DNA from: Macrostomum lignano
Taxonomy: Eukaryota
Assembly (NCBI GenBank): GCA_002269645.1
Contig: NIVC01000380.1
Coordinates: forward strand, 310,001 to 374,000
Length of the DNA: 64,000 nt
Direction of reading: 5' to 3'
Shown piece after piece: positions 15,745 through 64,000 of the stretch (position 1 is the stretch's first letter; every line of letters begins with the position of its first letter). Made by a program: the position numbers and the translations under genes. Below the pieces are notes generated by a model. The model did no database searches and was not told the DNA's origin. It saw nothing but the letters and a program-made list of their open reading frames with translations.

Positions 15745-17440
15745 AATCCATAGTAGCTATAGATTAGCAATCCATTCTGTTTCTTAATCCATAGTAGATG
15801 TAGATGTAGATTAGCAATCCATTCTCTTTCTTAATAATCCATAGTAGATGTAGATTAGCAATCCATTCTATTCCTTAATCCATAGTAGATGTAGATTAGC
15901 AATCCATTCTATTCCTTAATCCATAGTAGATGTAGATTAGCAATCCATTATATTCCTTAAGCAATAGTAGATGTAGATTAGCAATCCATTCTATCCCTTA
16001 ATCCATAGTAGATGTAGATTAGCAATCCATTATATTCCTTAAGCAATAGTAGATGTAGATTAGCAATCCATTCTATTCCTTAAGCAATAATAGATGTAGA
16101 TTAGCAATCCATTCTATTCCTTAATCCTTAGTAGATGTAGATTAGCAATCCATTATATTCCTTAATCCATAGTAGATGTAGATTAGCAATCCATTCTATT
16201 CCTTAAGCAATAGTAGATGTAGATTAGCAATCCATTCTATTCCCTAAGAAATAGTAGATGTAGATTAGCAATCCATTCTATTCCTTAATCCTTAGTAGAT
16301 GTAGATTAGCAATCCATTATATTCCTTAAGCAATAGTAGATGTAGATTAGCAATCCATTCTATTCCTTAAGCAATAGTAGATGTAGATTAGCAATCCATT
16401 CTATTCCTTAATCCTTAGTAGATGTAGATTAGCAATCCATTATATTCCTTAATCCATAGTAGATGTAGATTAGCAATCCATTCTATTCCTTAATCCTTAG
16501 TAGATGTAGATTAGCAATCCATTCTATTCCTTAATCCATAGTAGATGTAGATTAGCAATCCATTCTATTCCTTAAGCAATAGTAGATGTAGATTAGCAAT
16601 CCATTCTATTCCTTAAGCAATAGTAGATGTAGATTAGCAATCCATTCTATTCCTTAAGCAATAGTAGATGTAGATTAGCAATCCATTCTATTCCTTAAGC
16701 AATAGTAGATGTAGATTAGCAATCCATTCTATTCCTTAAGCAATAGTAGATGTAGATTAGCAATCCATTCTATTCCTTAAGCAATAGTAGATGTAGATTA
16801 GCAATCCATTCTATTCCTTAAGCAATAGTAGATGTAGATTAGCAATCCATTCTATTCCTTAAGCAATAGTAGATGTAGATTAGCAATCCATTATATTCCT
16901 TAAGCAATAGTAGATGTAGATTAGCAATCCATTCTATTCCTTAAGCAATAGTAGATGTAGATTAGCAATCCATTATATTCCTTAAGCAATAGTAGATGTA
17001 GATTAGCAATCCATTATATTCCTTAAGCAATAGTAGATGTAGATTAGCAATCCATTCTATTCCTTAAGCAATAGTAGATGTAGATTAGCAATCCATTACA
17101 TTCCTTAAGCAATAGTAGATGTAGATTAGCAATCCATTCTATTCCTTAAGCAATAGTAGATGTAGATTAGCAATCCATTCTATTCCTTAAGCAATAGTAG
17201 ATGTAGATTAGCAATCCATTCTATTCCTTAAGCAATAGCAGATGTAGATTAGCAATCCATTCTATTCCTTAAGCAATAGTAGATGTAGATTAGCGATCCA
17301 TTCTATTCCTTAAGCAATAGTAGATGTAGATTAGCAATCCATTCTATTCCTTAAGCAATAGCAGATGTAGATTAGCAATCCATTCTATTCCTTAAGCAAT
17401 AGTAGATGTAGATTAGCGATCCATTCTATCCCTTAATCCA
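15745..17440. repeat. 41-bp tandem array (cattctattccttaagcaatagtagatgtagattagcaatc), about 40 copies
   Basis: Head-to-tail units with no spacers; TTAATCC variant enriched on the left, TTAAGCA on the right. Confidence 0.95.
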
Positions 17441-27861: not shown

Positions 27862-29598
27862 TTACATCCTTGAGGGCGGGTGAGGTGCAGACAAGCGTAG
27901 CTTACATCCTTGAGGGCGGGTGAGGTGCAGACAAGCGTAGCTTACATCCTTGAGGGCGGGTGAGGTGCAGACAAGCGTAGCTTACATCCTTGAGGGCGGG
28001 TGAGGTACAGACAAGCGTAGCTTACATGCTTGAGGGCGGGCGAGGTACAGACAAGCGTAGCTTACATCCTTGAGGGCGGGTGAGGTGCAGACAAGCGTAG
28101 CTTACATCCTTGAGGGCGGGTGAGGTGCAGACAAGCGTAGCTTACATCCTTGAGGGCGGGTGAGGTGCAGACAAGCGTAGCTTACATCCTTGAGGGCGGG
28201 TGAGGTACAGACAAGCGTAGCTTACATCCTTGAGGGCGGGTGAGGTGCAGACAGGCGTAGCTTACATCCTTGAGGGCGGGTGAGGTACAGACAAGCGTAG
28301 CTTACATGCTTGAGGGCGGGTGAGGTGCAGACAAGCGTAGCTTACATCCTTGAGGGCGGGTGAGGTACAGACAAGCGTAGCTTACATCCTTGAGGGCGGG
28401 CGAGGTACAGACAAGCGTAGCTTACATGCTTGAGGGCGGGTGAGGTGCAGACAAGCGTAGCTTACATCCTTGAGGGCGGGTGAGGTGCAGACAAGCGTAG
28501 CTTACATCCTTGAGGGCGGGTGAGGTGCAGACAAGCGTAGCTTACATCCTTGAGGGCGGGTGAGGTACAGACAAGCGTAGCTTACATCCTTGAGGGCGGG
28601 TGAGGTGCAGACAAGCGTAGCTTACATCCTTGAGGGCGGGTGAGGTACAGACAAGCGTAGCTTACATCCTTGAGGGCGGGCGAGGTACAGACAAGCGTAG
28701 CTTACATCCTTGAGGGCGGGTGAGGTACAGACAAGCGTAGCTTACATGCTTGAGGGCGGGTGAGGTACAGACAAGCGTAGCTTACATGCTTGAGGGCGGG
28801 CGAGGTACAGACAAGCGTAGCTTACATCCTTGAGGGCGGGCGAGGTACAGACAAGCGTAGCTTACATCCTTGAGGGCAGGTGAGGTACAGACAAGCGTAG
28901 CTTACATCCTTGAGGGCGGGTGAGGTACAGACAAGCGTAGCTTACATCCTTGAGGGCGGGCGAGGTACAGACAAGCGTAGCTTACATCCTTGAGGGCGGG
29001 CGAGGTACAGACTTGAGGGTACAGACGTAGGGTAAGGTACAGACAAGCGTAGCTTACATCCTTGAGGGCGGGCGAGGTACAGACAAGCGTAGCTTACATC
29101 CTTGAGGGCAGGTGAGGTACAGACAAGCGTAGCTTACATCCTTGAGGGCGGGTGAGGTACAGACAAGCGTAGCTTACATGCTTGAGGGCGGGCGAGGTAC
29201 AGACAAGCGTAGCTTACATCCTTGAGGGCGGGCGAGGTACAGACAAGCGTAGCTTACATCCTTGAGGGCAGGTGAGGTACAGACAAGCGTAGCTTACATC
29301 CTTGAGGGCGGGTGAGGTACAGACAAGCGTAGCTTACATCCTTGAGGGCGGGCGAGGTACAGACAAGCGTAGCTTACATCCTTGAGGGCGGGCGAGGTAC
29401 AGACTTGAGGGTACAGACGTAGGGTAAGGTACAGACGTAGCTTACATCCTTGAGGGCATTCCTTATTTTAATAGTTCTATTGCTAGTTATAAATAGACAA
29501 AGCATACTGAAAAATACACTTTGCATTAGTGATCGCATATATCTTTTATGATAATCAGCTTCAGTAAGATGTGCATTAATCTAGTCCAACAATTTGTT

Positions 29599-41664: not shown

Positions 41665-44951
<3,287 letters not shown>

Positions 44952-45665: not shown

Positions 45666-47073
45666 CAGGGGTCAGCAAACTTTTTACCTCAAGGGCCAGA
45701 TTGAGAACAGCGCAGGACTGCCCTTCTTGGTCCGCTTTGCTGGGCCCCCTAAGAAGACTGCGGGCTATAGGGAGACAGGATAAGGAATAGAGAAGAGAAA
45801 TACGAGCGCAGGAGAAAGGAGAGGCGAAGGATTAAATGAGAAGAGAGTAGACGAGAAGAGAGATAAAATAGGAGAGGAGAGAGGAGAGGGGAGATGAATG
45901 AGGAGAGGAGAGTCGAAATATAAGAGAGAGGAGGGAGAAGAGAATGGAGATGAAACGGGAGATGAGAGGAGAGGAGAGAGGAGAGGAGAGGAGAGGAGAA
46001 GAGAGGAGAGGAGAGGAGAGGAGAGGAGAGGAGAGGAGAGGAGAGGAGAGGAGAGGAGAGGAGAGGAGAGGAGAGGAGAGAGGACAGGACAGGAGAGGAG
46101 AGGAGAGAACAGGACAGGAGAGGAGAGGAGAGGAGAGGACAGGAGAGGAGAGGACAGGAGAGGAGAGGAGAGGAGAGGAGAGAGAGGAGAGGAGAGGAGA
46201 GGAGAGGAGAGGAGAGGAGAGGAGAGGAGAGGAGAGGAGAGGAGAGGAGAGGAGAAGAGAGGAGAGGAGAGGAGAGGAGAGGAGAGGAGAGGAGAGGAGA
46301 GGAGAGGAGAGGAGAGGAGAGGAGAGGAGAGGAGAGGAGAGGAGAGGAGAGGAGAGGACAGGAGAGGAGAGGAGAGGACAGGAGAGGAGAGGAGAGGACA
46401 GGAGAGGAGAGGAGAGGAGAGGAGAGGAGAGGAGAGGAGAGGAGAAGAGAGGAGAGGAGAGGAGAGGAGAGGAGAGGACAGGAGAGGAGAGGAGAGGACA
46501 GGAGAGGAGAGGAGAGGAGAGGAGAGGAGAGGAGAGGAGAGGAGAAGAGAGGAGAGGAGAGGAGAGGAGAGGAGAGGAGAGGAGAGGAGAGGAGAGGAGA
46601 GGAGAGGAGAGGAGAGGAGAGGAGAGGAGAGGAGAGGACAGGAGAGGAGAGGAGAGGAGAGGAGAGGAGAGGAGAGGAGAGGACAGGAGAGGAGAGGAGA
46701 GGAGAGGAGAGGAGAGGAGAGGAGAGGAGAGGAGAGGACAGGAGAGGAGAGGAGAGGACAGGAGAGAACAGGAGAGGAGAGGAGAGGAGAAGAGAGGAGA
46801 GGAGAGGAGAGGAGAGGAGAGGAGAGGAGAGGAGAGGAGAGGAGAGGAGAGGAGAGGACAGGAAAGGACAGGAGAGGACAGGAGAGGAGAGGAGAGGAGA
46901 GGAGTTTATGAGCAGAGAGAGGGGAGGGAAGAGTGCTGAGAAGAGACGCGAACATCGAGCGGGATGGATTGTTGCTATTGATAGCGGAAGATTCAAATTA
47001 AGGACCCAAGTGCCGGATAGAGAGGCTTTGCGGGCCACATTTGGTCTTCAGGCCGGAGTTCGCCAAACCCCTG
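45666..47073. mobile_element. Nested non-autonomous hAT-Charlie-like element
   Basis: Ends CAGGGGTCAGCAAAC and CAGGGGTTTGGCGAAC with subterminal gggcc motifs; TSD ttttagtg/ttttagta (7/8). Confidence 0.8.
45880..46910. repeat. ~1-kb (GGAGA)n microsatellite with GGACA variants
   Basis: Seen directly; source of the SSPLL and ERRGE ORFs. Confidence 0.97.
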
Positions 47074-49304: not shown

Positions 49305-51718
49305 CTCAGCTAGTGCAATAATCCTTGGTTTATTAATAGCAATAATCCTTGATTAATCAAGTGCAATAATCCTTGGTTTATCAAGTGCAATAATCCTTGG
49401 TTTATCAAGTGCAGTAATCTTTGGCTTATCAAGTGCAATAATCCTTGGTTTATCAAGTGCAATAATCCTTTGTTTATCAAGTGCAATAATCCTTGGTTTA
49501 TCAAGTGCAATAATCCTTGGTTTATTAAGTGCAATAATCCTTGGTTTATCAAGTGCAATAATCCTTGGTTTATCTAGCGCAGTAATCCTTGGCTTATCAG
49601 GTGCAAAAATCCTTGGTTTATCAAGTGCAATATTTGTTTATCAAGTGCAATAATCCTTGGTTTATCAAGTGAAATAATCCTTGGTTTATCAAATGCAATA
49701 ATCCTTGGCTTATCAACTGCAATAATCCTTGGTTTATCAAGTGCAATAGTCCTTGGTTTATCAAGCGCAGTAATCCTTGGCCTATCAAGTGCAATAATCC
49801 TTGGCTTATCAAGTGCAATAATCCTTGGTTTATCAAGTGCAATAGTCCTTGGTTTATCAAGCGCAGTAATCCTTGGCCTATCAAGTGCAATAATCCTTGG
49901 CTTATCAAGTGCAATAATCCTTGGTTTATCAAGTGCAATAATCCTTGGTTTATCAAGTGCAGTAATCCTTGGCCTATCAAGTGCAATAATCCTTGGTTTG
50001 CCAAGAGCAATAATCCTTAGTTTATCGAGTGCAGTAATCCTTAGTTTTCCAAGTGCAGTAATCCTTGGTTTATTAAGAGCAATAATCCTTGGCTTATCGA
50101 GTGCAGTAATCCTTGGTTTGCCAAGAGCAATAATCCTTGGTTTATCAAGTGCAATAATCCTTGGTTTATCAAGTGCAATAATCCTTGGTTTATCAAGTGC
50201 AATAATCCTTGGTTTATCAGATGCAATAATCCTTGGCTTATCAACTGCAATAATCCTTGGTTTATCAGATGCAATAATCCTTGGCTTATCAACTGCAATA
50301 ATCCTTGGTTTATCAAGTGCAATAATCCTTGGTTTATCAAGCGCAGTAATCTTTGGCCTATCAAGTGCAATAATCCTTGGTTTATCAAGTGCAATAATCC
50401 TTGGTTTATCAAGTGCAATAATCTTTGGTTTATCAGATGCAATAATCCTTGGCTTATCAACTGCAATAATCCTTGGTTTATCAAGTGCAATAATCCTTGG
50501 CTTATCAAGTGCAATAATCCTTGTTTTATCAAGCGCAGTAATCTTTGGCCTATCAAGTGCAATAATCCTTGGTTTATCAAGTGCAGTAATCCTTGGCCTA
50601 TCAAGTGCAATAATCCTTGGTTTATCAAGTGCAATAGTCTTTGGTTTATCGAGTGCAGTAATCCTTAGTTTTCCAAGTGCAGTAATCCTTGGTTTATTAA
50701 GAGCAATAATCCTTGGTTTATCGAGTGCAGTAGTCCTTGGTTTATTAATATCAATAATCCTTGAATAATCCAGTGCATTAATCCTTGGCTTATCAAGTGC
50801 AACATTCTTTACTATCAAGTGCAATAATCCATGGCTTATCAAGTGCAATAATCCTTGGCTTATCAAGTGCAATAATCCTTGGTTTATCAAGTGCAATAAT
50901 CCTTTGTTTATCAAGTGCAATAATCCTTTGTTTATCAAGTGCAATAATCCTTTGTTTATCAAGTGCAATAATCCTTTGTTTATCAAGTGCGATAATCCTT
51001 GGTTTATCAAGCGCAATAATCCTTGGTTTATCAAGTGCGATAATCCTTGGTTTATCAAGCGCGATAATCCTTGGTTTATCAAGTGCGATAATCCTTGGTT
51101 TATCAAGCGCAGTAATCCTTGGCTTATCAAGTGCAATAATCCTTGGTTTATCAAGTGCAATAATCCTTGGTTTATCAAGCGCAGTAATCTTTGGCCTATC
51201 AAGTGCAATAGTCCTTGGTTTATCGAGTGCAGTAATTCTTGGTTTTCCAAGTGCAATAATCCTTGGCTTCTTGAGTGCAGTAATCCTTGGTTTGCCAAGA
51301 GCAATAGTCCTTGGTTTATCGAGTGCAGTAATCCTTGGTTTTCCAAGTGCAGTAATCCTTGGTTTATTAATAGCAATAATCCTTGGCTTCTTGAGTGCAG
51401 TAATCCTTGGTTTGCCAAGAGCAATAGTCCTTGGTTTATCGAGTGCATTAATCCTTGGTTTTCCAAGTGCAATAATTCTTGGCTTCTTGAGTGCAGTAAT
51501 CCTTGGTTTGCCAAGAGCAATAGTCCTTGGTTTATCGAGTGCAGTAATCCTTGGTTTTCCAAGTGCCGTAATCCTTGGTTTATTAATAGCAATAATCCTT
51601 GATTAATCAAGTGCAGTAATCTTTGGTTTGCCAAGAGCAATAGTCCTTGGTTTATCGAGTGCAGTAGTCCTTGGTTTATTAATAGCAATAATCCTTGGCT
51701 TATCGAGTGCAGTAATCT
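49305..51718. repeat. 24-bp satellite (aagtgcaataatccttggtttatc), about 100 copies, with higher-order blocks
   Basis: Tandem units; a variant block recurs at a 120-bp period (tttgccaaga at 51291 and 51411). Confidence 0.96.
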
Positions 51719-52405: not shown

Positions 52406-53962
52406 CTTGAATTTAAGCTTTCAATTACAAATTTAGGGTTCTACGGATGAAATCTATGAATCTATATGGATTCTGGCTGGCCGCTGGACTATGCTTGTGG
52501 CTTTAAAAATCCCTTTTAATTATAATTGCATACATTTTTATTAAACACATGAATTGCTGATGCCAATGGCTATAGCACATCGACCAGTGACATTTCTGCT
52601 TTCAAAGATGTCAGAGGAGTCAAATTATAGGGAGGAGAGGAGTGAAGACTTGAAATTGCTAACTGATGACCAGAAATAGGAGTTGTGGAGTCAGGACTGC
52701 AAAGAGAACGAGAAGTAGACTGCTAGAGGTACCTCAGGACGAGTAACTCCCTTCAGTCGTCACTTTTGGAAAAAAAGATCATCACAGAAAGCCTGAGATG
52801 AAGCGTTCTCCTTTCACGGAAATTTCGGGGTCGGGTACATATAGGGTCGGGTTTCGAGTTGTGGGTACAGGGTCCGGGTCAGGTTTCAGGTTCGGGGTCA
52901 GTGTTTCAGATTTGGGGCTTACCCCGAACCCGGAAAAAGTGGAAACCCAAACACCCCTACTATGGACAGAGCTTTTTCTTTACTTTTTCTGTAATCTCTC
53001 TATCCCAAAATTTATCCAACTCAACACATAGATTTGCAAAACCCCAAAAAATCTCTAACCCACACACTTAGCAACCTAAATTCGTGTACAACTAGGGCAC
53101 TGAGTCCCAGATTTTTAGTGCTTAAAAGCCCCCGCCGTTGCTAACCACGCGTCGGTTTTATCTGACTGTCTGATAGAAGAATTATAGGAGCTGTAAGAAC
53201 CTTCGATCGCTAGACCCACATCATAGAAAGTGAGAACACAAACGATAAGGTAACCAGAAGAAATAGAGATAAACTGAAGTGATAGTGTGCCAGCAGATCC
53301 CTTTTAGATTCCTTTGGGATGCCAAAGCAAATTATCCGTTTATTTTTTTATTGAAGCTTGTACTACATTACTGTAATGCAAGAAGATGAGCTCCTGGAAA
53401 GAACCGTAAAGCGAGTCTTATTAAGGAAGTAGCTGCAATCTGCACAAAATAATTTCGAGTATTGTTTGCATTGAATCCTGGCTTATGACTATGACCGACG
53501 AGGCTTAGTCTACAGCGAAGTACACCATGAAATACTTGGCTCCAAATGCCTTTCTCCGTCTGGACCTTCGCAGGCTGAATTCCCTCCTTAAACTTTGCAG
53601 CTTACTTGCTAATTAGGATATATTTGTTTTACCACCTACAAAGCAGCGGTTTTAACCCATAACTAAAAAGATACCATTCCCTTATGGCAATGTCGCTAGA
53701 CTCTGTACTCTGAGAATGGGCGTACCTTAAACAATGCTTTATCCACGACTTTACATAAAATTTTTCTGTTATATAAAATTACATAAAAATCTATTTACAT
53801 CATCTGTTCCTTTTGTCATTGGCATTGATTTCTTAAGCAAGACATCATGCTCGACAATTTTCATCTAAAAGTCTTTCCTTACTTTTAAAAAGTAATGAAA
53901 GTTACTAAAAATACAAACGTAAATCTCATATAAATGAAATAATGACTCCAAAGTTCTAAATA

Positions 53963-55910
53963 CGAGTGGGGTGGTCACAAAAGTAGTGTCGCTTTGCTTT
54001 CCATCATGATTCTGATGGGCTGCTAGAAATGAATTATGTTAGCTCTCTAGGGTTAAAAGTCCCATTGTTTCGTGTGCTAAAGATTTACACAGACGTAAAG
54101 TCCACTACGACTCTGGGTAGAAGCAAGTATTGGTGGAGATGAGGCAGCACAGACTTGTAGAGCACAAGCGACTGAGATTTATTAATGTCACGGACGCGAG
54201 TATTAATTCACTCTGCAGAAGGGCAACGACACGCCACATTCACCCTTAGGAATCTTGGTCAAAAGTGCCCAGAGACCCATGGGAATCTGATTTGCGTCCA
54301 ACCAGAACAAGAACGGTCTACCGGTGGATGGAGCAGTTTGAGGCTGGTCGACAAAGTGTGTGTGAGGCCATCTTGCCCGAGTGGACGCCCCAGGACATCC
54401 GCATCAAAAGACCTGCCTGACAGCATTTTGGATTTGCTGGAAAAGGATCCCCGCTACACAATCAGGCAGATTGCTGGCAGACTGGATGCCACCAGGTCCT
54501 GCGTACACCGCTGCATAACAGACAGCATGGGACAGGTGAAGTTGAGTGCCCGTTGCGTCCCGCGGCTCCTGACTGAGGACCTGAAAGCACAACGTGTAGA
54601 GGTCTGCAAGTCAAACAAGCATCAGGCCGAGCACCATGAGCTTTAGGGAGCAAATTGTCACTGGTGACGAGACGTGGATTCCCCACTTCGCTCCTCTCAC
54701 CAAGTCGCAATCAATGGTCTGGACAATCAAGGGATCCGATCCGATAGAAGCACGGCCACAATTCCAGAAGGTAATGGCTTTGGTCTTCTTCGACTGTCCT
54801 GGTCCATTGATGATTGACTTCCAGGAGCCCAACACGGCAGTGAAATCTGACCGTTACATGCAAGCCCTTACCAGACTGCGTCGCGACATCAGTAATAGGA
54901 GACGCTCTGGTCGACAGCCCTGCTGTTGCTCCATGACGTAAAGTCCACATATATTGTCACAAACTCGACAAAGATGGATGATTGACAAGGAGCGCTGGCG
55001 GGTCTTGCAGGCTTCGATGACAGAGCGGATGGTGGCAATCTGCTCGGTGGTGGACCTGCCCGGGCGGAAGCCGCTTTGGTCCTGTGCTCGCCTGCAGTGA
55101 TGGGGCCGGTGTTGAAGGCTGGAGCGAAGTCCGGGATCGGCAGAAGAAAGAGGCGCAGTTGGAGCAGGCGCGTTGAGCACCTCGCGGTAGTGGGTGGCCA
55201 GCAGGGCCTTGCGTTGCTCGGTGGAATCAGCGCCGACGATGGTGTTGGGCCTGGGCTTCCTGCCACTCAGCTGGTTGATGGCCCTCCAGGCAGCACTATG
55301 GCGGCAGTTGTCAGTAACGAGTTGGATTTAGGTCACAGCCTCTTCGATGAAGGCTTCAGTCCGCTGCAGCGCATCTACGCTCCATTGACAATGCCAGACC
55401 ACATACCGCCAAGAGGACCCAGGAGGCCGTAGAGAAGTTGCATTACAACATGTTGCCACACCTGCCCTACTCACCAGATTTGGCTCCATCGGATTACGCC
55501 TTGTTTCCTCATCTGAAGCAATTGCTGCGCGGGGTCGCGTTTATGAGGTGAGGATCGGGACTGCAGCATGGACGCTGTTCGCCACATCCTGGTCTACGAG
55601 ATTTCTCCATAATTCTACGATCGATGCACTCCGCCCCCGATGGCAGAAGTGTGTCCAGCTGAATGGAAACTACGTTGAGAAGAGGACAACGCCCATGGAT
55701 GAGGATGAGTAGTTATGTACCTCGCACTGTATAAAACTATGTCCTTGGCCCAATGCTAAATCCTTCATCACTTTTTCACTTTTTTCAATTGCAAAAGTTT
55801 TGGTGACATTTTGTTAAAGCCGCTATTCAGTAATTATTCCCTGTGTTTCAATTTATGATCATGGAAGGTAGTGCAAGCAAATGTGACAATACTTTTTCGA
55901 ACACCCTTCG
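53963..55910 (+). mobile_element. Tc1/mariner (mariner-type) transposon relic
   Basis: TA TSD at 53961-62 and 55911-12; TIRs CGAGTGGGGTGGTCACAAAAGTAGTGTC and CGAAGGGTGTTCGAAAAAGTATTGTC; transposase motifs SARCVPRLL, IVTGDETW, KVMALVFFD and PYSPDLAPSDYALF. Confidence 0.88.
54940..55430 (-). mobile_element. Decayed RTE-like RT fragment inserted antisense in the mariner
   Basis: QSGFRPGRSTTEQIATIRSVIEACKTRQRSLSI followed by IFVEF; interrupts the mariner just after the HD of the HDN motif. Confidence 0.7.
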
Positions 55911-56332
55911 TAGTTGCTGTCGATACTTCGTTTTCATTTTTTTCTGAATTTTTTGCATTTTTGAATTTCTGAAGACGTTCTGAATTTTTTTAAGAACGCA
56001 GAAAATAAAATTCTAGTATTGGAATTGGAGTTTCAACTTCATGAAATTTAAAATAAAAATGAATTGAAAAACTTCGGAGAAAAACGAAAATTTTAAAATA
56101 GAAATGAATTGAAAAACTTGAACGAAAACTTTTAGCCACTCACATTCTAAAATTCAATTTCTACGTGGTAGTTGATGTAGGAATTTGCAACGTGGCACAA
56201 ATTTATTTCAAGAATTTGCATTCGAGCTCTATAAAAGAAAGAGAGGCTCGAGGCTGCCGAATCAAGTTTTCGACGATCACAGAGAAGTCTAGTAAAACAA
56301 ACTCTCGAAGCAAAAAAGCAATTGAAGCAATC

Positions 56333-57934
56333 ATGCAGTTTGCAACTCTTGCTCTGTTCCTTCTTGTTGCGGTTTCAAGCGTCTTCGGAGGTAAGTCTCT
56401 ATACCCTGGATGGATTAGTATGAATTTAATTGAAATAGTATTAGTCTTATCTTATGTGTATTTGTATTAAAAATTATACCGGGCTCTGCCTTTACTTTCA
56501 GGCTACGTCAGTAAGTGCCTACGCGTCATTCCAAAGCAAAATTGATATTTATTCATAGATTAATTACTAGCTGAGAGTAAAAATTTACGCATTTATTCAA
56601 TTTTGGCTTTGCAATTAGGATGTATTTCACTGATTTCGTATTTTAATTCTGGGTATTTAGTGTGCTATTTTACCAACAATAATCGAGTTCCCATATCTCA
56701 ATTTCAGATATACCAGGTAAGTATCTACGACTACGAGTATTAACCCCAAAACCTATAAACAGCTAGGCTAAATAGGCTAGATGTTAAATAGGTGTACGCA
56801 TTTATAAAGCAAGCATTCTCCAGCTAATTAGATTGAATGCATCTTAATTTGGTCCGTTATGCCAGGTGACATTTTGACTCGACTCGCTGACTTCCTTGTC
56901 CTTTTGAGTCTGTTGTGCATTTGTGCGCTACTTCAGCTTCTCTCTCGTGTTGACCATTATCTTCCTCACGCCTTTGCGAGAGTGCCTTACCTTCATAATG
57001 CGTCTTGCTTTCTGATGACCATAATTTGTTTCATAGTGAAGCTGCAAAACCAATGCATATGCCTGACTATTCGAATCAATAGTTAGCCGCCACAGCGACC
57101 ACTCCCTGGGCTTCGCAGCGACTAACACTACCTGATATGCGGCCAAGTTGATCTGCTTGCAGATGTGTTGTGACTCGGTAGCCTTGGAAATTGTATTCAT
57201 ATGTATTTATAATGCACTGGCGTACATTTCCTACCAACAATAATTGAATTTTTACTAAAAAATTTCAGGAACATATTATAAGGGTTGTTTTTTGCATTTT
57301 GAGCATGAAAGTGCTCTAATTAGATTCGCCAAAGAGGACTCCAACATGTTTCTTCGTTCATGCATTTGGGCATGTCGAGACAGTAAAAAAATATATTTTG
57401 GAGTACAAGAAACAAACTGCTATTGCGGAGACCAGATCATATCAGAGCCGATTTTGCCATCACAGTGCGATCGCAGGTGTCCGGGAAACAACCGGGAAAC
57501 TTGTGGTGGCAATTTTGGTATGAGTATCTACGAAGTGCCACCTACTACGGCTGTAATAGTGCCGGGTAAGTGGACAGCCGTAGCCGTATGATTTATTAGC
57601 TGTCAAAAATTTACAGAGTCACACTTTTGTCGTTTTTTCAGCACCGTCAAAGGGATGTTATTATTATAAAAAAGATTTAGTCTTGGACTTCAAGTTGAAA
57701 AAAAATTTTGCGGCTATGAACCAAAGAATGTGTGCTGAAGGCTGCTTGCAATGGTCATACAAATATTTTGGTCTAGCAAATGGCAACGAGTGCCACTGTG
57801 GCAATAGAATACTGCAAGGAAAAGCAGCGCCTAACAGGCTCTGTAACGCTCGATGCAAGAAAGGCATGGAAAATGAAACGTGTGGTGGCGCTAAGGCAAT
57901 GGAAGTATTCAATTTGCTTACTACACATATCTGA
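56333..57934 (+). CDS. Secreted protein with two WSC domains, 5 exons including two 9-nt micro-exons, 221 aa
   Basis: Exons 56333-56390 (signal peptide MQFATLALFLLVAVSSVFG), 56502-56510, 56708-56716, 57269-57565 and 57642-57934; all introns phase 1 with AG/GTAAG ends; 666 nt. WSC patterns YKGCF..C..C..YFG..CYCG..C..C.G..ETCGG occur twice; AATAAA near 58016. Confidence 0.88.
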
Positions 57935-59289
57935 GCCGAACAGCTACTGACTAGCTGGAATTTGACCAAAACTTTAAACACACTATCTAACAGCAGAATG
58001 TAAAAGTTCAAGCTCAATAAACATTGTTTAGTGAAAAATCTAAGATCTGCATAAAAATTGATGCAATGAAAACTGACTCTGTCATTTCTTACATATTTTG
58101 CAACTTACATATCATTACGCCAGGGATAATATGAATTCATTAATGCACAAGAGTTAAAAACATCAAAATCATCAAACAATTTTCTCGTGCGAGGGAAAGA
58201 TGAAATGTAAAAGTTTTATAGCAAATTCGGAAGTGGTTGCAAACAAACCGAAGCACATTTCTTCTTTCTGAATAACTTAAATCTCGTATATTAACCATCG
58301 CCTCGCACTGATAGTCTTTAAGTGAAAGTGGCAGAATATTCAAAGAGGCGCTTTGTCCATATGGGAAGAAATTGATGTCATTATTATATTCAGAAGCCTT
58401 CGAAGCAGCCTTCTCATCACAGTCTTCACTCGCAGCAACACACTTCTCCCATGGCTTAAGCATTCTTTCATCTTCCCCTGTTGCAACTAACTTGCGATCT
58501 TCTGATCTCCGTCGAGCTTTTTTTGATCTGCGAGCTCTGGCCGGTTCTTTGAGCTTAGAGCTCGCAAGGTTCTCTTTGATCTACTGGCAAGGCCGGCATG
58601 TTTTCAGGTATCTTTAGTTTTATGGCTCCAGTTGGATCTGCAAGCAGACCCTGTCAGTTCTTGTTTTTTTCAGTTCTCCATGGTTGAGTCAGTCGGTTGG
58701 GATCTGCCCGTAGAGCCGGCCGGTCTTTCGGACCGAGGTTGGGTTTAGAAAGGTCCCCGTCCCTAGTTTGAGTGCATTATCCACAGTCGGCTCGAAGCCA
58801 TGATACAAGTTGATGAGTTACCCACGAGGGCCACGATACCTATCTGGCCGCTCCACCTGACCAGGCAGGATGCCAAAAAAAGATTCCTCAAGGCTGGCTT
58901 GACACCAGAAGGTGGACCACTAGCGACCGGACTACTCCCCGGCCTTCCAGCCTAGCAGCGCAGAGAACGCCTCAGGCGTTAGAGGGCCGCGTACGTTGGG
59001 CAGAACCAAGGCCTGCAAGCCACATACCCCAGTTCGGCCGGAGCTACTGGATGGGTCGCCAGCACCAGAGACCGAGGGTCTGCCTTGCACACCAGTGGGG
59101 AAGAGTTCTCTAAGTTGGCTAACGAAACAGCTTGGGGGAGTCTGCGGCTGCCAGAGACAAATAGATGGTGCAGATCTCTCACCAACCTTGACGTGCACAG
59201 TAGGGGGGGGGGCGTGAAACATCGCAGACCATAGCCCATAGGCCTAGTGTCTCGTACTACAGGGACATTCTGAAACGCCATCAGGGGCC

Positions 59290-59645
59290 CTCTCACCGAT
59301 CACCAACCATGAGTCACTTGTGCCCCTCACCGATCACCAACCATGAGTCACATGTGCCTCTCATCGATCACCAACCATGAGTCACTTGTGCCCCTCACCG
59401 ATCACCAACCATGAGCTACATGTGCCTCTCACCGATCACAAACCATTAGTCACTTGTGCCTCTCACCGATCACAAATCATGAGCTACATGTGCCTCTCAC
59501 CGATCACAAACCATGAGCTACATGTGCCTCTCACCGATCACAAACCATTAGTCACTTGTGCCTCTAACCGATCACAAACCATAAGTCACTTGTGCCTCTC
59601 ACCGATCACCAACCATGAGTCACTTTGTGCCTCTCACCGATCACC
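59290..59645. repeat. 35-bp minisatellite (ctctcaccgatcaccaaccatgagtcacttgtgcc)
   Basis: Tandem units visible. Confidence 0.9.
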
Positions 59646-59689
59646 TACCAAGAGGCGCTTGTAATTTGGATGCAGAAGGTACCTTGCTA

Positions 59690-60245
59690 TGTGTGCAGGT
59701 GTTTCAGTGGGTGTCTGCCATGTGTGCAGGTGTTTCAGCGGGTGTCTGCCATGTTTCCAGGTGTTTCAGCGGGTGTCTGCCATGTGTGCAGGTGTTTCAG
59801 TGGGTGTCTGCCATGTGTGCAGGTGTTTCAGCGGGTGTCTGCCATGTTTCCAGGTGTTTCAGCGGGTGTCTGCCATGTGTGCAGGTGTTTCAGCGGGTGT
59901 CTGCCATGTTTCCAGGTGTTTCAGCGGGTGTATGCCATGTGTGCAGGTGTTTCAGCGGGTGTCTGCCATGTGTGCAGGTGTTTCAGCGGGTGTCTGCCAT
60001 GTGTACAGGTGTTTCAGCGGGTGTCTGCCATGTGTGCAGGTGTTTCAGCGAGTGTCTACACCATGTGTGCAGGTGTTTCAGCGGGTGTCTGCCATGTGTG
60101 CAGGTGTTTCAGCGGGTGTCTGCCATGTGTGCAGGTGTTTCAGCGGGTGTATGCCATGTGTGCAAGTGTTTCAGCGGGTGTATGCCATGTGTGCAGGTGT
60201 TTTAGCGGGTGTATGCCATGTATGCAGGTGTTTCAGCGGGTGTCA
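59690..60245. repeat. 31-bp minisatellite (gtgtgcaggtgtttcagcgggtgtctgccat)
   Basis: Period 31; ORFs rotate through all three frames. Confidence 0.92.
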
Positions 60246-61321
60246 ATCCGGTGTGCAGTTTACTTTATTTTAAAATGTATCTAGCTATTAGCTCGTAATG
60301 AGCACAATAGACCGTTAAACAATAATTAAATTTTGAATTGGATCCATTGCAATTTTTTTATTTTTGGAATTTGTTTTACGTAAAAGACTTTGGATTCGAA
60401 AGTTTTCAAATGATTTGAATGTTTCAACCAAGAGAATGAGAGGTCGGATTACATTTTTTTCTGAGCGATTTCTTGGAGGTTTTGTCAATGCCCTGAGTGC
60501 TTTGAAAATTCAAAAAAGTGAAATGGTAAATACTACCTTTATGGAATTAAAAAAATTAAAATAAAAACTTTTCAATTTGTAAAGACATTCCTGCGATTCC
60601 TGTGATTCCTGCCGTCAATGTGGTCCGCCGACTGCTTGCTTTACTTTTTCATCATTCCAATATTCACTACCCCCTTGAGGACCCCCTCTTTATTCTGGTT
60701 TCCCCTCTATGAACCAGTGCGAGTATTTTATCACCCAAATGCACACACCAAAACCTCATTTCGAATTCACAATCTTTTTATTCTTCGCTAATCCAATATT
60801 TTCGCTGATACGAGTATATTATAAGCCCGGGCTGACCCGAGGGTCCCTTCCAGACCTAATCGTTTAAAAAACAGAAAAGACATTCCTAACTGAGTGCAAA
60901 AATAGTAAGTTTTTGTCTCTTGATAGTGAAAACAAAACTCAAATAGCTCGTATTATTCTCACAACTTTCATATGAAGAGATTGGATATGTGAGGGCTCTG
61001 CCCCTGCAAAAAAGGGCTAACCCATAGATCTTATATTCCCTAGATAGGCCACTTGTATGGCGGCAATAGGGAAAGTGCGACCGCTGTTTTTCGTCCCTTG
61101 TGCGAAAAAAGCCGACATGGGTTGCTTCAATTTTGAGTTCAGTAGCTTAGGGACAGGGACGCTATTTTGAGAATTGAATAAAACTTCTCATGAATTTATT
61201 AAACAGCTACTCAATTAAACTAAGAATGATGCAATTCACATGAATTCACTGCAGAGACTACTGACTAAATTGAGTTCAGTAGTTGATTTTCGCGCTGTTG
61301 CGAGATGAAAAAATTTTCATC

Positions 61322-61767
61322 TCGCCGATTCCTGGTTCGCCGGAATTCCTGATTTGCCGAAGTTCCTGATTTGCCGAATTCACTATTCGGCCAATTCGTA
61401 CTACGTCGAATATCTGGTAATGCCTGTAGCCTGTGCTAGCTAATACAATAGATAGGCCATTCTTTGTTTGAACTTTTTGTACATTTTTGCTTGTTATTTG
61501 ACTCGGGAATTACGGCGAATCAGGAATCGGCGAATCGGGATTCGGCAAAAGAGGAATTTCGGCAAATCGGGAATAGGCAACTCGGGAATTCCGGCGAACC
61601 AGGAATCGGCGAATCGGGATTCGGCAAAAGAGGAATTTCCGCAAATAAGGAATTTCGGCAAATCGGGAATAGGCGACTCGGGAATTCCGGCGAACCAGGA
61701 ATCAGCGAATCAGGATTCGGCGAGCTGGGAATCGGCAAATCGGGATTCGGCGAATCGGGGGTAGACC
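61322..61767. mobile_element. Asymmetric foldback/MITE relic (ggcgaatcgggattc subrepeats)
   Basis: Left arm tcgccgattcctggttcgccggaattcc is the reverse complement of sequence in the right arm; right end gggggtagaccc; left terminus missing. Confidence 0.6.
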
Positions 61768-63149
61768 CTTGCTAATTGGTTCGGCAATAATGTACATTGG
61801 CCAGTCCACTGAAATGTACATGGCCGCTTTAGGCTGGAATTTCCGATAAAGGCAATTAAAATTGGGGTGGGGCGGGGCTGGGCGGGGTGGGGTGGGACGG
61901 GGATGAGCGGGGTGGGGATGGAGTGGAAAGAAAGGCGCGGTTGGTTTTATTGGGGTCGGGGGGCAAGAGCCAATAAATGAACCTTGACTTTAAAATTAAA
62001 AATACATTAAAATGCTTCCGTTTAACTTGCTACTGAACTGAAAGTAGCTTACACGCAAATGTGCTGAGTGGCCCATCTAGTCTAGTTATTCTAGAATCTA
62101 TGATACAGATCAAATGCTATCAACCTAAAAGTGCCTCTCAGTCTCAACTTAAGCTCAAAAAGTGGAGCCCGAATAACCAATGTACACAAATGATACGTCA
62201 TTCTGCTCACAGTGACACCAGGAAGCTGGGTTGGGCAAAAATATTACAAAAAGTTGGACCTGGGATAGTTAGGGACAATTAGGGACTGCTCGAAAAAGGA
62301 AAAAAAGATAGTAATAACTACTTTTCCCTTTGAAAAATATTAGCTAATTATTTTGGGAGATAGTCGATTGTAAGTCAACAGCACAAGATTTTAATTTTTA
62401 TAGGCATAGATATAAGCTAACAACAGAATAATTCAGTTTATTTGTTGGCCAGGTGAGTTAAATTAATAGCGTCAAAAGTAACCTTATGTGCGCACTTTAA
62501 TGTTCGTAAATGGACCTAATGCAAAATGTTTTTACAATTGTTGATACAAACCAGCTATAGATAATTAATAGATATAGATAGTTAATCTATGAAGTTCGCG
62601 TGGAAATGATTGAAAGCGTTTAAATATTAACTGACGCAATATGAAGCTTTTCTGCAATTTAATATTTGAAAAGGACTTAACAAAATTGAAATAGTCGAAG
62701 GGACAAGACTAATAATATTAACATGTACAAATCTGAAGATAAGCGCTTAATTCATTATCTAAGCTAACACATGATATGATAATGACAATACGTGCTAATG
62801 TCTATACAATAATACTCAATACTAATGAACAACTCAAAATTTTTTTTATAAAGTTCTTCACTACTGAAAAATAGCAAAACAATTTAATAACAGGAAAGAC
62901 AAACAAAATGTTCAACGTGCAGACAGAGAAGTCAACACCTCCATTAAAATCTGCAATTAAGTCGACCAACAACAATGAATCTTATTTTAGCAGTGATTTA
63001 TCCTACGGAGATAGCAATTTCTTTTTTAACGTTAACGAAACAAAGCTAACAGACCTAAAGACTAGTTCATATTTGTTAGTTGCGACCAAGTTATTAGATA
63101 GTCAATAGACAGAACTAGTTATATATTGACTATCTATTAGGACTGCTTG

Positions 63150-64000
63150 TTAGACAGAGGACCCACTTTCTAAACGCAGGGGCCACTGTTAGACACAGAG
63201 GACCACTTTCTAGACACAGAGGACCACTGTTAGACACAGAGGACCACTTTCTAGACACAGGGGACCACTGTTAGACACAGATGACCCGATTGTTAGACAC
63301 AGATGATCCACTTGTTGGACACAGATGACCCGATTGTTAGACACAGATGACCCACTTGTTGGACACAGATGACCCGATTGTTAGACACAGATGACCCACT
63401 TGTTGGACACAGAGGACCCACTTGTTGGACACAGAGGACCCACTTGTTGGACACAGATGACCCGATTGTTAGACACAGATGACCCACTTGTTGGACACAG
63501 AGGACCCGATTGTTAGACACAGATGACCCACTTGTTGGACACAGAGGACCCGATTGTTAGACACAGATGACCCGATTGTTAGACACAGATGACCCACTTG
63601 TTGGACACAGAGGACCCACTTGTTAGACACAGATGACCCGATTGTTAGACACAGATGACCCGATTGTTAGACACAGATGACCCGATTGTTAGACACAGAT
63701 GACCTGATTGTTAGACACAAAGGACCCCCTTGTTGGACACAGAGGACCACTTTCTAGACACAGAGGACCCGATTGTTAGACACAGAGGACCCACTTGTTG
63801 GACACAGAGGACCCACTTGTTGGACACAGATGACCCGATTGTTAGACACAGATGACCCACTTGTTGGACACAGAGGACCCGATTGTTAGACACAGATGAC
63901 CCACTTGTTGGACACAGAGGACCCGATTGTTAGACACAGATGACCCACTTGTTGGACACAGAGGACCCGATTGTTAGACACAGATGACCCACTTGTTGGA
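63150..64000. repeat. 22-bp minisatellite (ttagacacagatgacccgattg / ttggacacagaggacccacttg), runs off the window end
   Basis: Tandem units with two interleaved variants. Confidence 0.93.

What the first reader, a model, noticed from the sequence alone, without database searches (positions are those of the whole stretch)
56333..57934. Secreted WSC protein with tandem symmetric 9-nt micro-exons after the signal peptide
Two 9-nt exons (GCTACGTCA and ATATACCAG) each have a pyrimidine-rich tttcAG acceptor and GTAAGT donor, are both phase 1-1, and add GYV and NIP at the mature N-terminus. Either can be skipped without a frameshift. This layout (signal exon, symmetric micro-exons, secreted product) recalls the micro-exon genes (MEGs) of schistosomes, here attached to a glycan-binding WSC pair. 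The acceptors before exons 3 and 4 share taccaacaataat.ga.tt..aatttcag, hinting that the micro-exons arose by duplication of intron ends. It may be a variable secreted lectin-like system in mucus, adhesion or immunity (inference).
Basis: partly seen in the sequence, partly recalled or inferred. Interest (0 to 1): 0.75.

Follow-up and report, generated by a model that had tools for sequence, protein, structure and literature searches.

The report
Two real micro-exons, flatworm WSC gene
The two 9-base exons are genuine, RNA-supported parts of a secreted sugar-binding (WSC) protein gene of the free-living flatworm Macrostomum lignano; the gene belongs to a family that includes prostate-gland and seminal-fluid genes, so this is an ordinary though previously undescribed and mis-annotated gene architecture, not a schistosome-style micro-exon gene.

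Summary
The window is Macrostomum lignano contig NIVC01000380.1. TTCAG-N9-GTAAGT occurs only twice in the 64 kb, both times here (0.02 expected). Four near-identical genomic copies keep both micro-exons. Two deposited, purely RNA-seq-derived protein models equal the translation with both micro-exons. A de novo transcript of a 37%-identical paralog, RNA815_80.4, which is prostate-gland-specific by in situ hybridisation, contains its own two 9-nt micro-exons.

The layout "signal exon, micro-exon(s), WSC exon" runs through the family, but the micro-exon complement varies: 9+9, 15+9, one 12-nt micro-exon before each of six WSC exons (Mlig011622, the Mlig-pro46 gene), or none. About 35 nt of intron upstream of the second micro-exon is conserved across subfamilies.

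The window's own deposited CDS is truncated to 170 aa, and an aligner artefact at the micro-exons would explain this.

The gene fails every quantitative criterion for a micro-exon gene (MEG). No skipping isoform is on record, and alternative splicing remains untested. The most likely role is a fast-evolving seminal-fluid lectin-like protein, which is an inference from paralogs.

The parts
56228..56332 (+). Conserved 5' module (5'UTR/promoter-proximal sequence, including TATAAAAG at 56231-56238)
   Evidence: It is 77% identical over 91 nt to the 5' end of the prostate-specific transcript RNA815_80.4 (E 8e-14). It is 93% identical to the Mlig001771 locus, where the WSC exons are only 65% identical. 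Some transcript models extend upstream of the TATA-like motif, so the transcription start is not fixed.
56333..56390 (+). Exon 1: start codon and signal peptide MQFATLALFLLVAVSSVFG, ends in phase 1, donor GTAAGT
   Evidence: It is invariant in all four close genomic copies and 88% identical to Mlig001771.
56502..56510 (+). Micro-exon a, 9 nt GCTACGTCA (adds G-Y-V), phase 1-1, TTTCAG acceptor and GTAAGT donor
   Evidence: It is invariant in 4 copies. It is included in the deposited RNA-derived models P0002 and P0004. Homologous micro-exons of 9 or 15 nt exist in Mlig001771, Mlig005381 and Mlig026601.
56668..56707 (+). Conserved intronic element directly upstream of micro-exon b (ttttaccaacaataatcgagttcccatatctcaatttcag)
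   Evidence: Positions -40..-7 are significantly similar across subfamilies (window vs L007 z=8.5; L008 vs L007 z=10; p<0.002). Neighbouring intron sequence is not (sequences). A role as a splicing signal is an inference.
56708..56716 (+). Micro-exon b, 9 nt ATATACCAG (adds N-I-P), phase 1-1
   Evidence: It varies among close copies: ATTTACTAG gives NLL and ATATAACAG gives NIT, and all 3 changes are non-synonymous. It is included in P0002 and P0004.
57226..57268 (+). Second copy of the TACCAACAATAAT-containing element, upstream of the exon 4 acceptor
   Evidence: 23/25 nt, p<=0.001, same 37-nt distance to the AG. It is present in the window subfamily, partly present in L008, and absent from L006 and L007.
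57269..57565 (+). Exon 4: first WSC domain, phase 1-1
   Evidence: Pfam WSC. The AlphaFold model of the 94%-identical copy has pLDDT >=92 in the cores. Foldseek matches yeast Wsc1 7PZ2 (TM 0.78, rmsd 2.0 A) and the Kremen WSC domain.
57346..57934 (+). The CDS as deposited for this locus (PAA84349, Mlig011934g4, 170 aa from the internal Met51): truncated
   Evidence: The truncation would follow from the aligner artefact demonstrated for Mlig011934g1.
57642..57934 (+). Exon 5: second WSC domain and stop codon (TGA 57932-57934)
58016..58021 (+). AATAAA polyadenylation signal about 80 nt after the stop codon
   Evidence: Read directly from the sequence.

Best explanation
This is one of several near-identical copies (Mlig011934g4) of a Macrostomum lignano gene for a small secreted protein with two WSC (carbohydrate-binding, PAN/apple-like) domains.

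The two 9-nt exons are bona fide micro-exons that are spliced into the mRNA. They encode a six-residue linker (GYVNIP) between the signal-peptide cleavage site and the first WSC domain.

They are an old, family-wide architectural feature. The building block is 'phase 1-1 micro-exon(s) plus phase 1-1 WSC exon'. Because everything is in phase 1, evolution has duplicated, resized or deleted these pieces without breaking the frame.

Their recognition most likely rests on three things, all inferred: consensus splice sites (TTTCAG / GTAAGT), short flanking introns, and a conserved intronic element upstream of micro-exon b.

By homology to characterised paralogs, the protein is most likely made in the prostate gland cells and transferred in seminal fluid. 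It evolves fast in its mature part, while the promoter, 5'UTR and signal exon are conserved.

Shown here: exon structure, inclusion in RNA-derived models, family conservation, paralog variation, the WSC fold, and elevated dN/dS.

Inferred: prostate expression of this copy, constitutive inclusion, and the splicing role of the intronic element.
For: - Organism and locus: the window is 100% identical to NIVC01000380.1.
- Gene model and statistics.
- All four close genomic copies retain both micro-exons with their splice sites.
- The deposited proteins PAA85598 and PAA91566 equal the translation with both micro-exons. That annotation was built only from RNA-seq and de novo transcripts, with no ab initio predictor (PMC5730564).
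- The frameshifted PAA54186 is reproduced exactly by exon 1 + 'G' joined to 'CAG' + exon 4. This is an aligner that failed to place an 18-nt insert beginning with G and ending with CAG, which matches the two micro-exons.
- De novo transcript RNA815_80.4 maps to Mlig005381. Its nt 157-174 are exactly two 9-nt micro-exons flanked by aatttcag/gtcagt and aatttcag/gtaagt. That transcript is prostate-specific by ISH, and its RNAi removes MPr-1 prostate antibody staining (PMC4490696).
- Exon structures in the family: Mlig001771 is 58/9/9/297/299 and Mlig026601 is 64/15/9/294/305. Mlig011622 has a 12-nt micro-exon before each of six WSC exons and carries the Mlig-pro46 primers. Mlig020751 has lost both micro-exons in frame.
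- The intron upstream of micro-exon b is conserved across subfamilies.
- dN/dS is about 1 to 4.6 among close copies and 0.43-0.84 among paralogs. The upstream 100 nt is 93% identical and the signal exon 88%, against 65% for the WSC exons.
- WSC fold.
Against: - There are no expression data for this particular gene. Mlig011934, Mlig016501 and Mlig022002 are absent from the searchable full texts, and those three plus Mlig005381, Mlig001771 and Mlig026601 are absent from the two supplement sets searched.
- Reads cannot be assigned among the near-identical copies, so this copy could be silent.
- The CDS deposited for this very locus lacks exons 1-3, and the full 221-aa product is not in the 15-billion-protein collection.
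- Constitutive inclusion is assumed only because the few available transcript models contain the micro-exons. GenBank holds one model per gene.
- The role of the conserved intronic element in splicing is untested.
Confidence: 0.75

Rival explanations
1. MEG-like diversification. The two symmetric micro-exons are cassette exons. They are included or skipped in different cells or individuals, giving up to four N-terminal variants of a secreted lectin, as in schistosome micro-exon genes.
For: - Both micro-exons are 9 nt and phase 1-1, so all four combinations stay in frame.
- Micro-exon b is the most variable stretch among near-identical copies: 3 of 9 positions, all non-synonymous, and one variant creates an N-I-T sequon.
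- Paralogs differ in micro-exon number and size.
- An older UniRef model of the multi-WSC gene (P0154) reads exactly as an in-frame skip of its 12-nt micro-exons.
- The gene is secreted and probably gland-expressed.
Against: - No skipping isoform of this gene or three paralogs is found by exact look-up, and none is present in the 90% cluster.
- Every RNA-derived model that resolves the region includes both micro-exons, as does the de novo transcript of the paralog.
- The splice sites are consensus-strength and the flanking intron is conserved, which is more typical of efficient inclusion.
- P0154 comes from a different, older annotation and may simply have missed 12-nt exons.
- The gene fails the MEG criteria.
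Confidence: 0.15
2. The gene is real and the micro-exons are included, but the protein acts outside reproduction, for example as a mucus, adhesive, eggshell or immune lectin, rather than as a seminal-fluid protein.
For: - WSC domains are generic glycan-binding modules. The best non-flatworm hits are multi-WSC proteins of fungi, Diplonema and oyster.
- No direct expression evidence exists for Mlig011934.
Against: - The closest characterised relatives are prostate-limited.
- The 5' module is conserved with the prostate-specific RNA815_80.4.
- dN/dS is high, as expected for reproductive proteins.
Confidence: 0.2
3. The 9-mers are chance splice-site look-alikes inside one long first intron, and exon 1 splices directly to exon 4.
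For: - Direct splicing would also be in frame.
- The deposited CDS of this locus does not contain them.
Against: - Chance expectation is 0.02 against 2 observed.
- The micro-exons are conserved in four copies and in position, size and phase in paralogs about 40-49% identical.
- The encoded residues are present in deposited RNA-derived proteins and in a de novo transcript.
- The truncated deposited CDS is explained by an alignment artefact.
Confidence: 0.02

Closest known systems
RNA815_80.4 / Mlig005381 (Arbore et al. 2015, PMC4490696): prostate-gland-specific two-WSC transcript of M. lignano
   Same: - The architecture is the same: signal exon, 9-nt micro-exon, 9-nt micro-exon, WSC exon, WSC exon, all phase 1-1.
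- The 5'UTR/promoter-proximal sequence is homologous (77% over 91 nt).
- The size is similar (223 vs 221 aa), and VPAPSKGC and FGLANGN motifs are shared.
   Different: - The WSC region is only about 37% identical in protein.
- Exon 1 is 3 nt longer.
- The micro-exon sequences are unrelated (CCGAATTCA / ATCAAATCA).
- It has no TACCAACAATAAT copy before the WSC exon.
- Its expression and RNAi phenotype are known, while those of the window gene are not.
Mlig-pro46 / Mlig011622 (Weber et al. 2018; Patlar et al. 2019 preprint): multi-WSC seminal-fluid candidate. From memory it was later named suckless-1; the texts read here do not state this.
   Same: Secreted WSC protein of the same species. Every WSC exon is phase 1-1 and preceded by a symmetric micro-exon.
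   Different: It has one 12-nt micro-exon (AGCACCCGAACT, EHPN-F) per WSC exon, repeated six times in a 29-kb, 13-exon model. The window gene has two 9-nt micro-exons before the first WSC exon only.
Schistosome and tapeworm micro-exon genes (MEGs; DeMarco et al. 2010; Olson et al. 2020, PMC7653826)
   Same: Flatworm gene with a signal-peptide exon followed by symmetric micro-exons whose length is divisible by three. The product is secreted and probably gland-made, the sequence evolves fast, and the family is expanded by duplication.
   Different: In MEGs, micro-exons make up most of the coding sequence and occur in long runs, and exon skipping is documented. Here they are 2.7% of the CDS and 2 of 5 exons, the bulk of the protein is two ordinary domain exons, and no skipping is documented. 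There is no sequence homology to any MEG.
Conserved short micro-exons of bilaterian genes (3-27 nt; e.g. neural micro-exons, Irimia et al. 2014; from my own knowledge)
   Same: Very short in-frame exons with strong splice sites and unusually conserved flanking intron sequence. They encode a few surface or linker residues.
   Different: Those are typically tissue-regulated cassette exons in intracellular neuronal proteins. Here they sit at the N-terminus of a secreted lectin-like protein, and regulation is unknown.
Accelerated-evolution secreted families with a conserved signal/UTR and hypervariable mature regions (conotoxins, snake venom PLA2, many seminal-fluid proteins; from my own knowledge)
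   Same: The 5' module and signal exon are far more conserved than the mature-protein exons (93% and 88% vs 65%), and dN/dS approaches or exceeds 1.
   Different: The fold and biology are different. Positive selection was not formally tested here.

Membership tests
WSC-domain proteins (Pfam PF01822) | Significant match to the WSC profile | tested here: met
   E 2e-27, 95.7 bits against a cut-off of 27.8, two domains.
WSC-domain proteins (Pfam PF01822) | Cysteine-rich PAN/apple-like fold resembling solved WSC domains | tested here: met
   AlphaFold model of the 94%-identical copy P0002 has mean pLDDT 85.4. Foldseek matches Wsc1 7PZ2 (TM 0.78, rmsd 2.0 A) and Kremen 5FWU (E 6.5e-7). The cysteines are invariant in the family alignment.
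WSC-domain proteins (Pfam PF01822) | Carbohydrate binding | not testable with these tools
   Needs a glycan array or binding assay.
M. lignano prostate-limited / seminal-fluid WSC proteins (Arbore 2015; Weber 2018) | Homology to characterised members and shared gene architecture | tested here: met
   The window gene shares its five-exon architecture and 5' module with RNA815_80.4. The profile search returns only M. lignano WSC proteins plus one unnamed JGI metagenome protein (P0167) at E<=1e-10.
M. lignano prostate-limited / seminal-fluid WSC proteins (Arbore 2015; Weber 2018) | N-terminal secretory signal peptide | tested here: inconclusive
   MQFATLALFLLVAVSSVFG has the n/h/c regions and a small residue at -1, judged by eye. 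No SignalP was available. pLDDT is <50 for residues 1-15.
M. lignano prostate-limited / seminal-fluid WSC proteins (Arbore 2015; Weber 2018) | Prostate-gland-limited expression (ISH) and transfer in the ejaculate | not tested
   No data for Mlig011934 were found. This is shown only for paralogs.
Micro-exon genes (MEGs) of parasitic flatworms | Micro-exons symmetric (length divisible by 3) and following a signal-peptide exon | tested here: met
   9 + 9 nt, phase 1-1, after the signal exon.
Micro-exon genes (MEGs) of parasitic flatworms | [quoted passage not shown] 2020 operational definition) | tested here: not met
   The gene has 5 exons, 2 of them micro-exons (40%), in a run of 2, and 18 of 666 coding nt. 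Even the 13-exon Mlig011622 has 6 of 13 micro-exons and no run longer than 1.
Micro-exon genes (MEGs) of parasitic flatworms | Protein variants generated by skipping of micro-exons | not testable with these tools
   No read-level RNA data were available. No skipping isoform is in the protein collections.

The most novel reading that the evidence does not exclude
The phase-1 micro-exon cassettes in front of the WSC exons are alternatively included. Macrostomum would then diversify the N-termini and inter-domain linkers of its seminal-fluid lectins by exon skipping. This would be a 'proto-MEG' system in a free-living, early-branching flatworm. It would show that MEG-type organisation predates parasitism and was first used in sexual conflict rather than in host interaction. 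The conserved intronic element upstream of micro-exon b would be its regulatory switch.
Probability: 0.1. Interest if true: 0.7.

Novelty: new member of a known kind. Interest (0 to 1): 0.38.

Why it matters
1. Annotation. At three of the ten loci examined (Mlig011934g4, which is this window, Mlig011934g1 and Mlig005381g2) the deposited protein is truncated or frameshifted, because 9-nt exons were not placed. The correct 221-aa product is absent from the protein collection searched here. Studies that test M. lignano seminal-fluid candidates for signal peptides or evolutionary rates would be affected. Weber et al. could not find an ORF for 11 of 76 transcripts.

2. Biology. The work ties an unannotated gene to the expanded WSC family, which includes prostate and seminal-fluid candidates. 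It also shows that the family's unit of evolution is a phase 1-1 'micro-exon + WSC exon' module that has been duplicated, resized and deleted in frame.

3. Evolution. Laumer et al. 2015 (PMC4398949) asked whether micro-exon gene organisation is a parasitic novelty or has a deeper 'turbellarian' history. This family is a concrete, testable case with some but not all MEG features in a free-living flatworm that has transgenesis and RNAi.

4. Splicing. A 35-nt intronic element is conserved across paralogs whose coding sequence has diverged to about 40-49% protein identity. It is a candidate splicing signal for a 9-nt exon.

Tried and rejected
- The first word-based homology search found only the gene's own 90% cluster. 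The family had to be reached through the literature and a profile search.
- A full-text search for Mlig011934, Mlig016501 and Mlig022002 found nothing. Searches of the supplements of PMC7336406 and PMC5816591 for Mlig011934, Mlig005381, Mlig016501, Mlig001771 and Mlig026601 also found nothing. The gene could therefore not be matched to a numbered Mlig-pro transcript.
- The Mlig-pro46, Mlig-pro63 and RNA815_80.4 primers do not match the window, so the window gene is none of these.
- Exact look-up of full-length and skipped isoforms of four family members found none of them.
- Rejected: a tandem WSC paralog inside the window (tblastn).
- Rejected: an Rfam RNA in the gene or its introns. The only hit was a chance match at E 0.21.
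- Rejected: intron 3 as a dispersed repeat. It matches only the orthologous or paralogous introns.
- Rejected: the loose micro-exon pattern as a window-wide feature.
- TACCAACAATAAT does not look like a branch point by eye. TACTAAA at 57254-57260, 9-15 nt upstream of exon 4, looks like a better branch site. This was not tested.
Full report
**Where the window comes from**

The predicted protein hits a single 90% cluster of Macrostomum lignano proteins. Window 53346-61934 is 100% identical to GCA_002269645.1 contig NIVC01000380.1, positions 363346-371934. M. lignano is a free-living, regenerating, hermaphroditic flatworm with a recently duplicated and redundantly assembled genome (PMC5730564).

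**Check of the observation**

- Exon 1 is 56333-56390 (58 nt) and encodes MQFATLALFLLVAVSSVFG plus one base.
- Micro-exon a is 56502-56510 (GCTACGTCA).
- Micro-exon b is 56708-56716 (ATATACCAG).
- Exon 4 is 57269-57565 (297 nt) and exon 5 is 57642-57934 (293 nt, ending in TGA).
- All four acceptors are TTTCAG. All four donors begin GTAAGT.
- Every exon boundary is in phase 1.
- The product is 221 aa with two Pfam WSC domains (E 2e-27).
- Skipping either or both micro-exons keeps the frame.

The strict configuration TTCAG-N9-GTAAGT occurs exactly twice in the 64 kb, both inside this one gene and in the same phase. The expectation is 0.02. A permissive micro-exon scan is at chance level elsewhere in the window. 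The repeated TACCAACAATAAT motif, 37 nt upstream of both the exon 3 and exon 4 acceptors, is also real (p <= 0.001). An AATAAA lies about 80 nt after the stop codon.

**Are the micro-exons used?**

Three independent lines say yes.

1. Conservation. Four genomic copies that are 92-97% identical (window; L001 = Mlig011934g3; L003 = g1; L002 = Mlig016501g1) all keep both micro-exons and their splice sites. Micro-exon a is invariant. Micro-exon b reads NIP, NLL or NIT.

2. RNA-derived models. The GenBank annotation of this assembly was built only from RNA evidence: STAR and StringTie, BLAT-mapped de novo transcripts, TACO and TransDecoder. No ab initio predictor was used (PMC5730564).
- The deposited proteins PAA85598 (g3) and PAA91566 (Mlig016501g1) are letter-for-letter the translation that includes both micro-exons.
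- The odd, 5'-partial PAA54186 (g1) is reproduced exactly by joining exon 1 plus one base (G) to CAG plus exon 4. That is what an aligner does when it cannot place an 18-nt insert that begins with G and ends with CAG, and the two micro-exons have exactly those ends. So this model too derives from a transcript that contained them.
- The same frameshift would explain why the CDS deposited for the window's own locus (PAA84349, 170 aa, window 57346-57934) starts at the internal Met51. In the shifted frame the window's 5'UTR has stop codons.

3. An independent de novo transcript. RNA815_80.4 (Arbore et al. 2015) was found through a literature search for Macrostomum and WSC. It maps to Mlig005381 (L006). 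Transcript nt 1-156 map to exon 1 and nt 175 onward to the first WSC exon. The 18 nt in between are exactly two 9-nt pieces of the intron: CCGAATTCA (aatttcag|..|gtcagt) and ATCAAATCA (aatttcag|..|gtaagt). This paralog is only about 37% identical in protein. Its deposited CDS is again truncated to an internal Met.

**The family**

A profile search of 1.8 billion representatives finds 4022 WSC proteins at E <= 0.001. The best non-flatworm hits are large multi-WSC proteins of Diplonema, basidiomycete fungi and oyster. The word-based profile search returns, at E <= 1e-10, nine M. lignano WSC proteins and one unnamed metagenome protein.

Exon structures were recovered by exact spliced back-translation:

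| Gene | Exon lengths (nt) |
|---|---|
| Mlig001771g1 | 58 / 9 / 9 / 297 / 299 |
| Mlig026601g1 | 64 / 15 / 9 / 294 / 305 |
| Mlig011622g1 | 109 / 12 / 297 / 12 / 300 / 12 / 297 / 12 / 297 / 12 / 285 / 12 / 278 |
| Mlig020751g3 | 64 / 297 / 296 |
| Mlig001653g2 | 58 / 33 / 638 |

- In Mlig011622g1, a 12-nt phase 1-1 micro-exon AGCACCCGAACT (or a one-base variant of it; four of the six copies are identical) precedes every WSC exon.
- Mlig020751g3 has no micro-exons. Its single first intron keeps a relic of the micro-exon a acceptor region, followed by the homolog of the Mlig005381 third intron. This indicates an in-frame deletion of both micro-exons.
- In Mlig001653g2, the 33-nt exon is the remnant of the 3' end of a WSC1 exon.

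The phase 1-1 'micro-exon(s) + WSC exon' module is therefore ancestral in this family. The number of micro-exons varies between paralogs, even though it is constant (two) among the four two-WSC groups that retain them.

**Expression and likely function**

- RNA815_80.4 is tail-specific in positional RNA-seq and confined to prostate gland cells by ISH. [quoted passage not shown]
- Weber et al. 2018 list many WSC-type proteins among 76 prostate-limited, putative seminal-fluid transcripts.
- The RNAi primers published for Mlig-pro46 match Mlig011622g1 exactly.
- The window gene is none of these. However, it shares with RNA815_80.4 a 5' module that is more conserved than the coding sequence (77% over 91 nt).

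I therefore infer, but have not shown, prostate expression and a seminal-fluid role. No text or supplement I could search mentions Mlig011934.

**Mode of evolution**

- Among the four close copies, non-synonymous changes outnumber synonymous ones. For the window against g3 the counts are 17 vs 1 (dN/dS about 4.6). Against Mlig016501, dN/dS is about 1.05. Intron divergence is 4-6%.
- Between paralog groups, mature-region dN/dS is 0.43-0.84.
- Between the window and Mlig001771, the 100 nt upstream are 93% identical and the signal exon 88%. The WSC exons are 65% identical and the micro-exons 44-56%. Synonymous divergence is 0.07 in the signal exon against 0.52 in the mature part.
- This is the familiar picture of a conserved secretion and regulatory module joined to a fast-evolving mature protein. 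Gene conversion of the 5' module is an alternative that I did not test.
- All cysteines are conserved and all copies keep open frames.

**Splicing signals**

Excluding the TTTCAG itself, positions -40 to -7 upstream of micro-exon b are significantly similar between subfamilies (window vs Mlig026601 z = 8.5; Mlig001771 vs Mlig026601 z = 10). The micro-exon sequences of these subfamilies differ. The regions further upstream, downstream of micro-exon b, and around micro-exon a are conserved only within subfamilies.

Its second copy, before exon 4, is present in the window subfamily, partly present in Mlig001771, and absent in Mlig005381 and Mlig026601. A duplication of an acceptor region is therefore possible. 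If it happened, it is old or has been followed by divergence. An equally good reading is a shared cis-element needed to define a 9-nt exon. I cannot separate these two readings.

**Structure**

An AlphaFold model of the 94%-identical copy P0002 (20-sequence alignment) has mean pLDDT 85.4. The two WSC cores are at >= 92 and the signal peptide is below 50. The block containing the micro-exon residues (21-30) is at 76. The hexapeptide therefore lies at the edge of the confidently folded domain and not in its core. Foldseek matches yeast Wsc1 (7PZ2, TM 0.78) and the Kremen WSC domain.

**Comparison with MEGs**

Olson et al. 2020 define micro-exons as shorter than 70 nt and divisible by three. They define MEGs as genes with at least 7 exons, at least half of them micro-exons, and at least four micro-exons in a row. 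They also stress exon skipping as the source of protein variation.

The window gene shares the signal exon, the symmetry, secretion, rapid evolution and family expansion. It fails all three quantitative criteria. No skipping isoform is recorded, either in the cluster members or by exact look-up of eight possible skipped isoforms and two unrecorded full-length forms.

The one hint of skipping is the older UniRef model P0154. It reads as Mlig011622 with its 12-nt micro-exons skipped (G|TT = V in place of EHPNF). It comes from a different annotation and may simply be a missed exon.

Searches for 'Macrostomum' with 'micro-exon' or 'microexon' found no description of this architecture. Laumer et al. 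2015 explicitly leave open whether micro-exon gene organisation predates parasitism.

**Verdict**

The micro-exons are real and the paralogs vary, but the gene is not a MEG. Alternative splicing is unproven, and the likely biology is seminal fluid, not mucus or immunity.
- I file it as a new, mis-annotated member of the known M. lignano secreted WSC family, which includes prostate-limited members. The family-wide micro-exon module has not been described before.
- Interest is moderate. It would rise substantially only if read-level data showed regulated skipping.

Noticed in passing
window 57346-57934; L003 4001-5654; L006 10001-10615: Deposited CDSs are wrong at three family loci because 9-nt exons were not placed. 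PAA84349 (this window) and PAA... Mlig005381g2 start at internal Mets. PAA54186 (Mlig011934g1) reads the signal exon out of frame through a non-canonical G/CAG junction.
   Followed up: yes
L009 3001-32023 (NIVC01000040.1 1207529-1236551): Mlig011622g1 is a 13-exon, 29-kb model in which a 12-nt phase 1-1 micro-exon (AGCACCCGAACT) precedes each of six WSC exons. The Mlig-pro46 RNAi primers match it exactly. The Mlig-pro63 primers also map inside the same model: the forward primer lies in 'intron' sequence about 100 nt upstream of several WSC exons, where no ORF continues. The two published seminal-fluid 'transcripts' may therefore come from one gene or tandem array.
   Followed up: partly
L010 3065-3427; L011 3901-3933: Mlig020751g3 has lost both micro-exons by an in-frame deletion that leaves a relic of the micro-exon a acceptor region. 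Mlig001653g2 has a 33-nt phase 1-1 exon that is the leftover 3' end of a WSC1 exon, followed by one 638-nt exon carrying two WSC2-type domains. This suggests that small symmetric exons can arise by erosion of domain exons.
   Followed up: partly
window 56488-56490 and the homologous sites in L006, L007 and L008: A UGC trinucleotide lies 13-17 nt upstream of the micro-exon a acceptor AG in all four two-micro-exon paralog groups. In vertebrates, UGC motifs near the 3' splice site act as micro-exon enhancers (from memory). No test was done.
   Followed up: no
L003 4438-4446 (micro-exon b of Mlig011934g1): The variant ATATAACAG turns N-I-P into N-I-T, creating a potential N-glycosylation sequon in one copy only. 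All three substitutions seen in micro-exon b among near-identical copies are non-synonymous.
   Followed up: no
window 56228-56390 vs L008: The 5' module (upstream 100 nt 93% identical, signal exon 88%, dS 0.07) is far more similar between paralog groups than the mature-protein exons (65%, dS 0.52). This points to strong constraint on the regulatory and signal sequence, or to gene conversion or swapping of the 5' module.
   Followed up: partly
window 56783-57014 vs L011 3647-3891: A 232-nt stretch of intron 3 is 71% identical to intron 1 of the divergent paralog Mlig001653. This is about as conserved as, or more conserved than, the coding exons. It is not a dispersed repeat among the fetched loci and has no Rfam match.
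   Followed up: partly
window 59289-59662 and 59685-60244: Two minisatellite arrays (34-bp x11 and 31-bp x18) lie 1.4 kb downstream of the gene. They are shared with the paralogous loci, with very different copy numbers; the 31-bp array is much longer in L002.
   Followed up: no
window, e.g. 7155-8575, 13359-13853, 15738-17436, 27862-29404, 45838-46904, 49312-51717, 63183-63997: The window is dense in minisatellites (periods 15-45 bp, up to 100 copies) and holds a (GAGAG)n tract of 1 kb. These account for the GC-skew spikes in the composition profile.
   Followed up: no
window 41851-44862 (+); 11250-12467 (-): A 1003-codon ORF carries reverse transcriptase and RNase H domains (retroelement). 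A 405-codon ORF has a LicD-family match. An unexplained 1042-codon ORF at 21080-24208 (-) has no Pfam hit and overlaps tandem repeats.
   Followed up: partly
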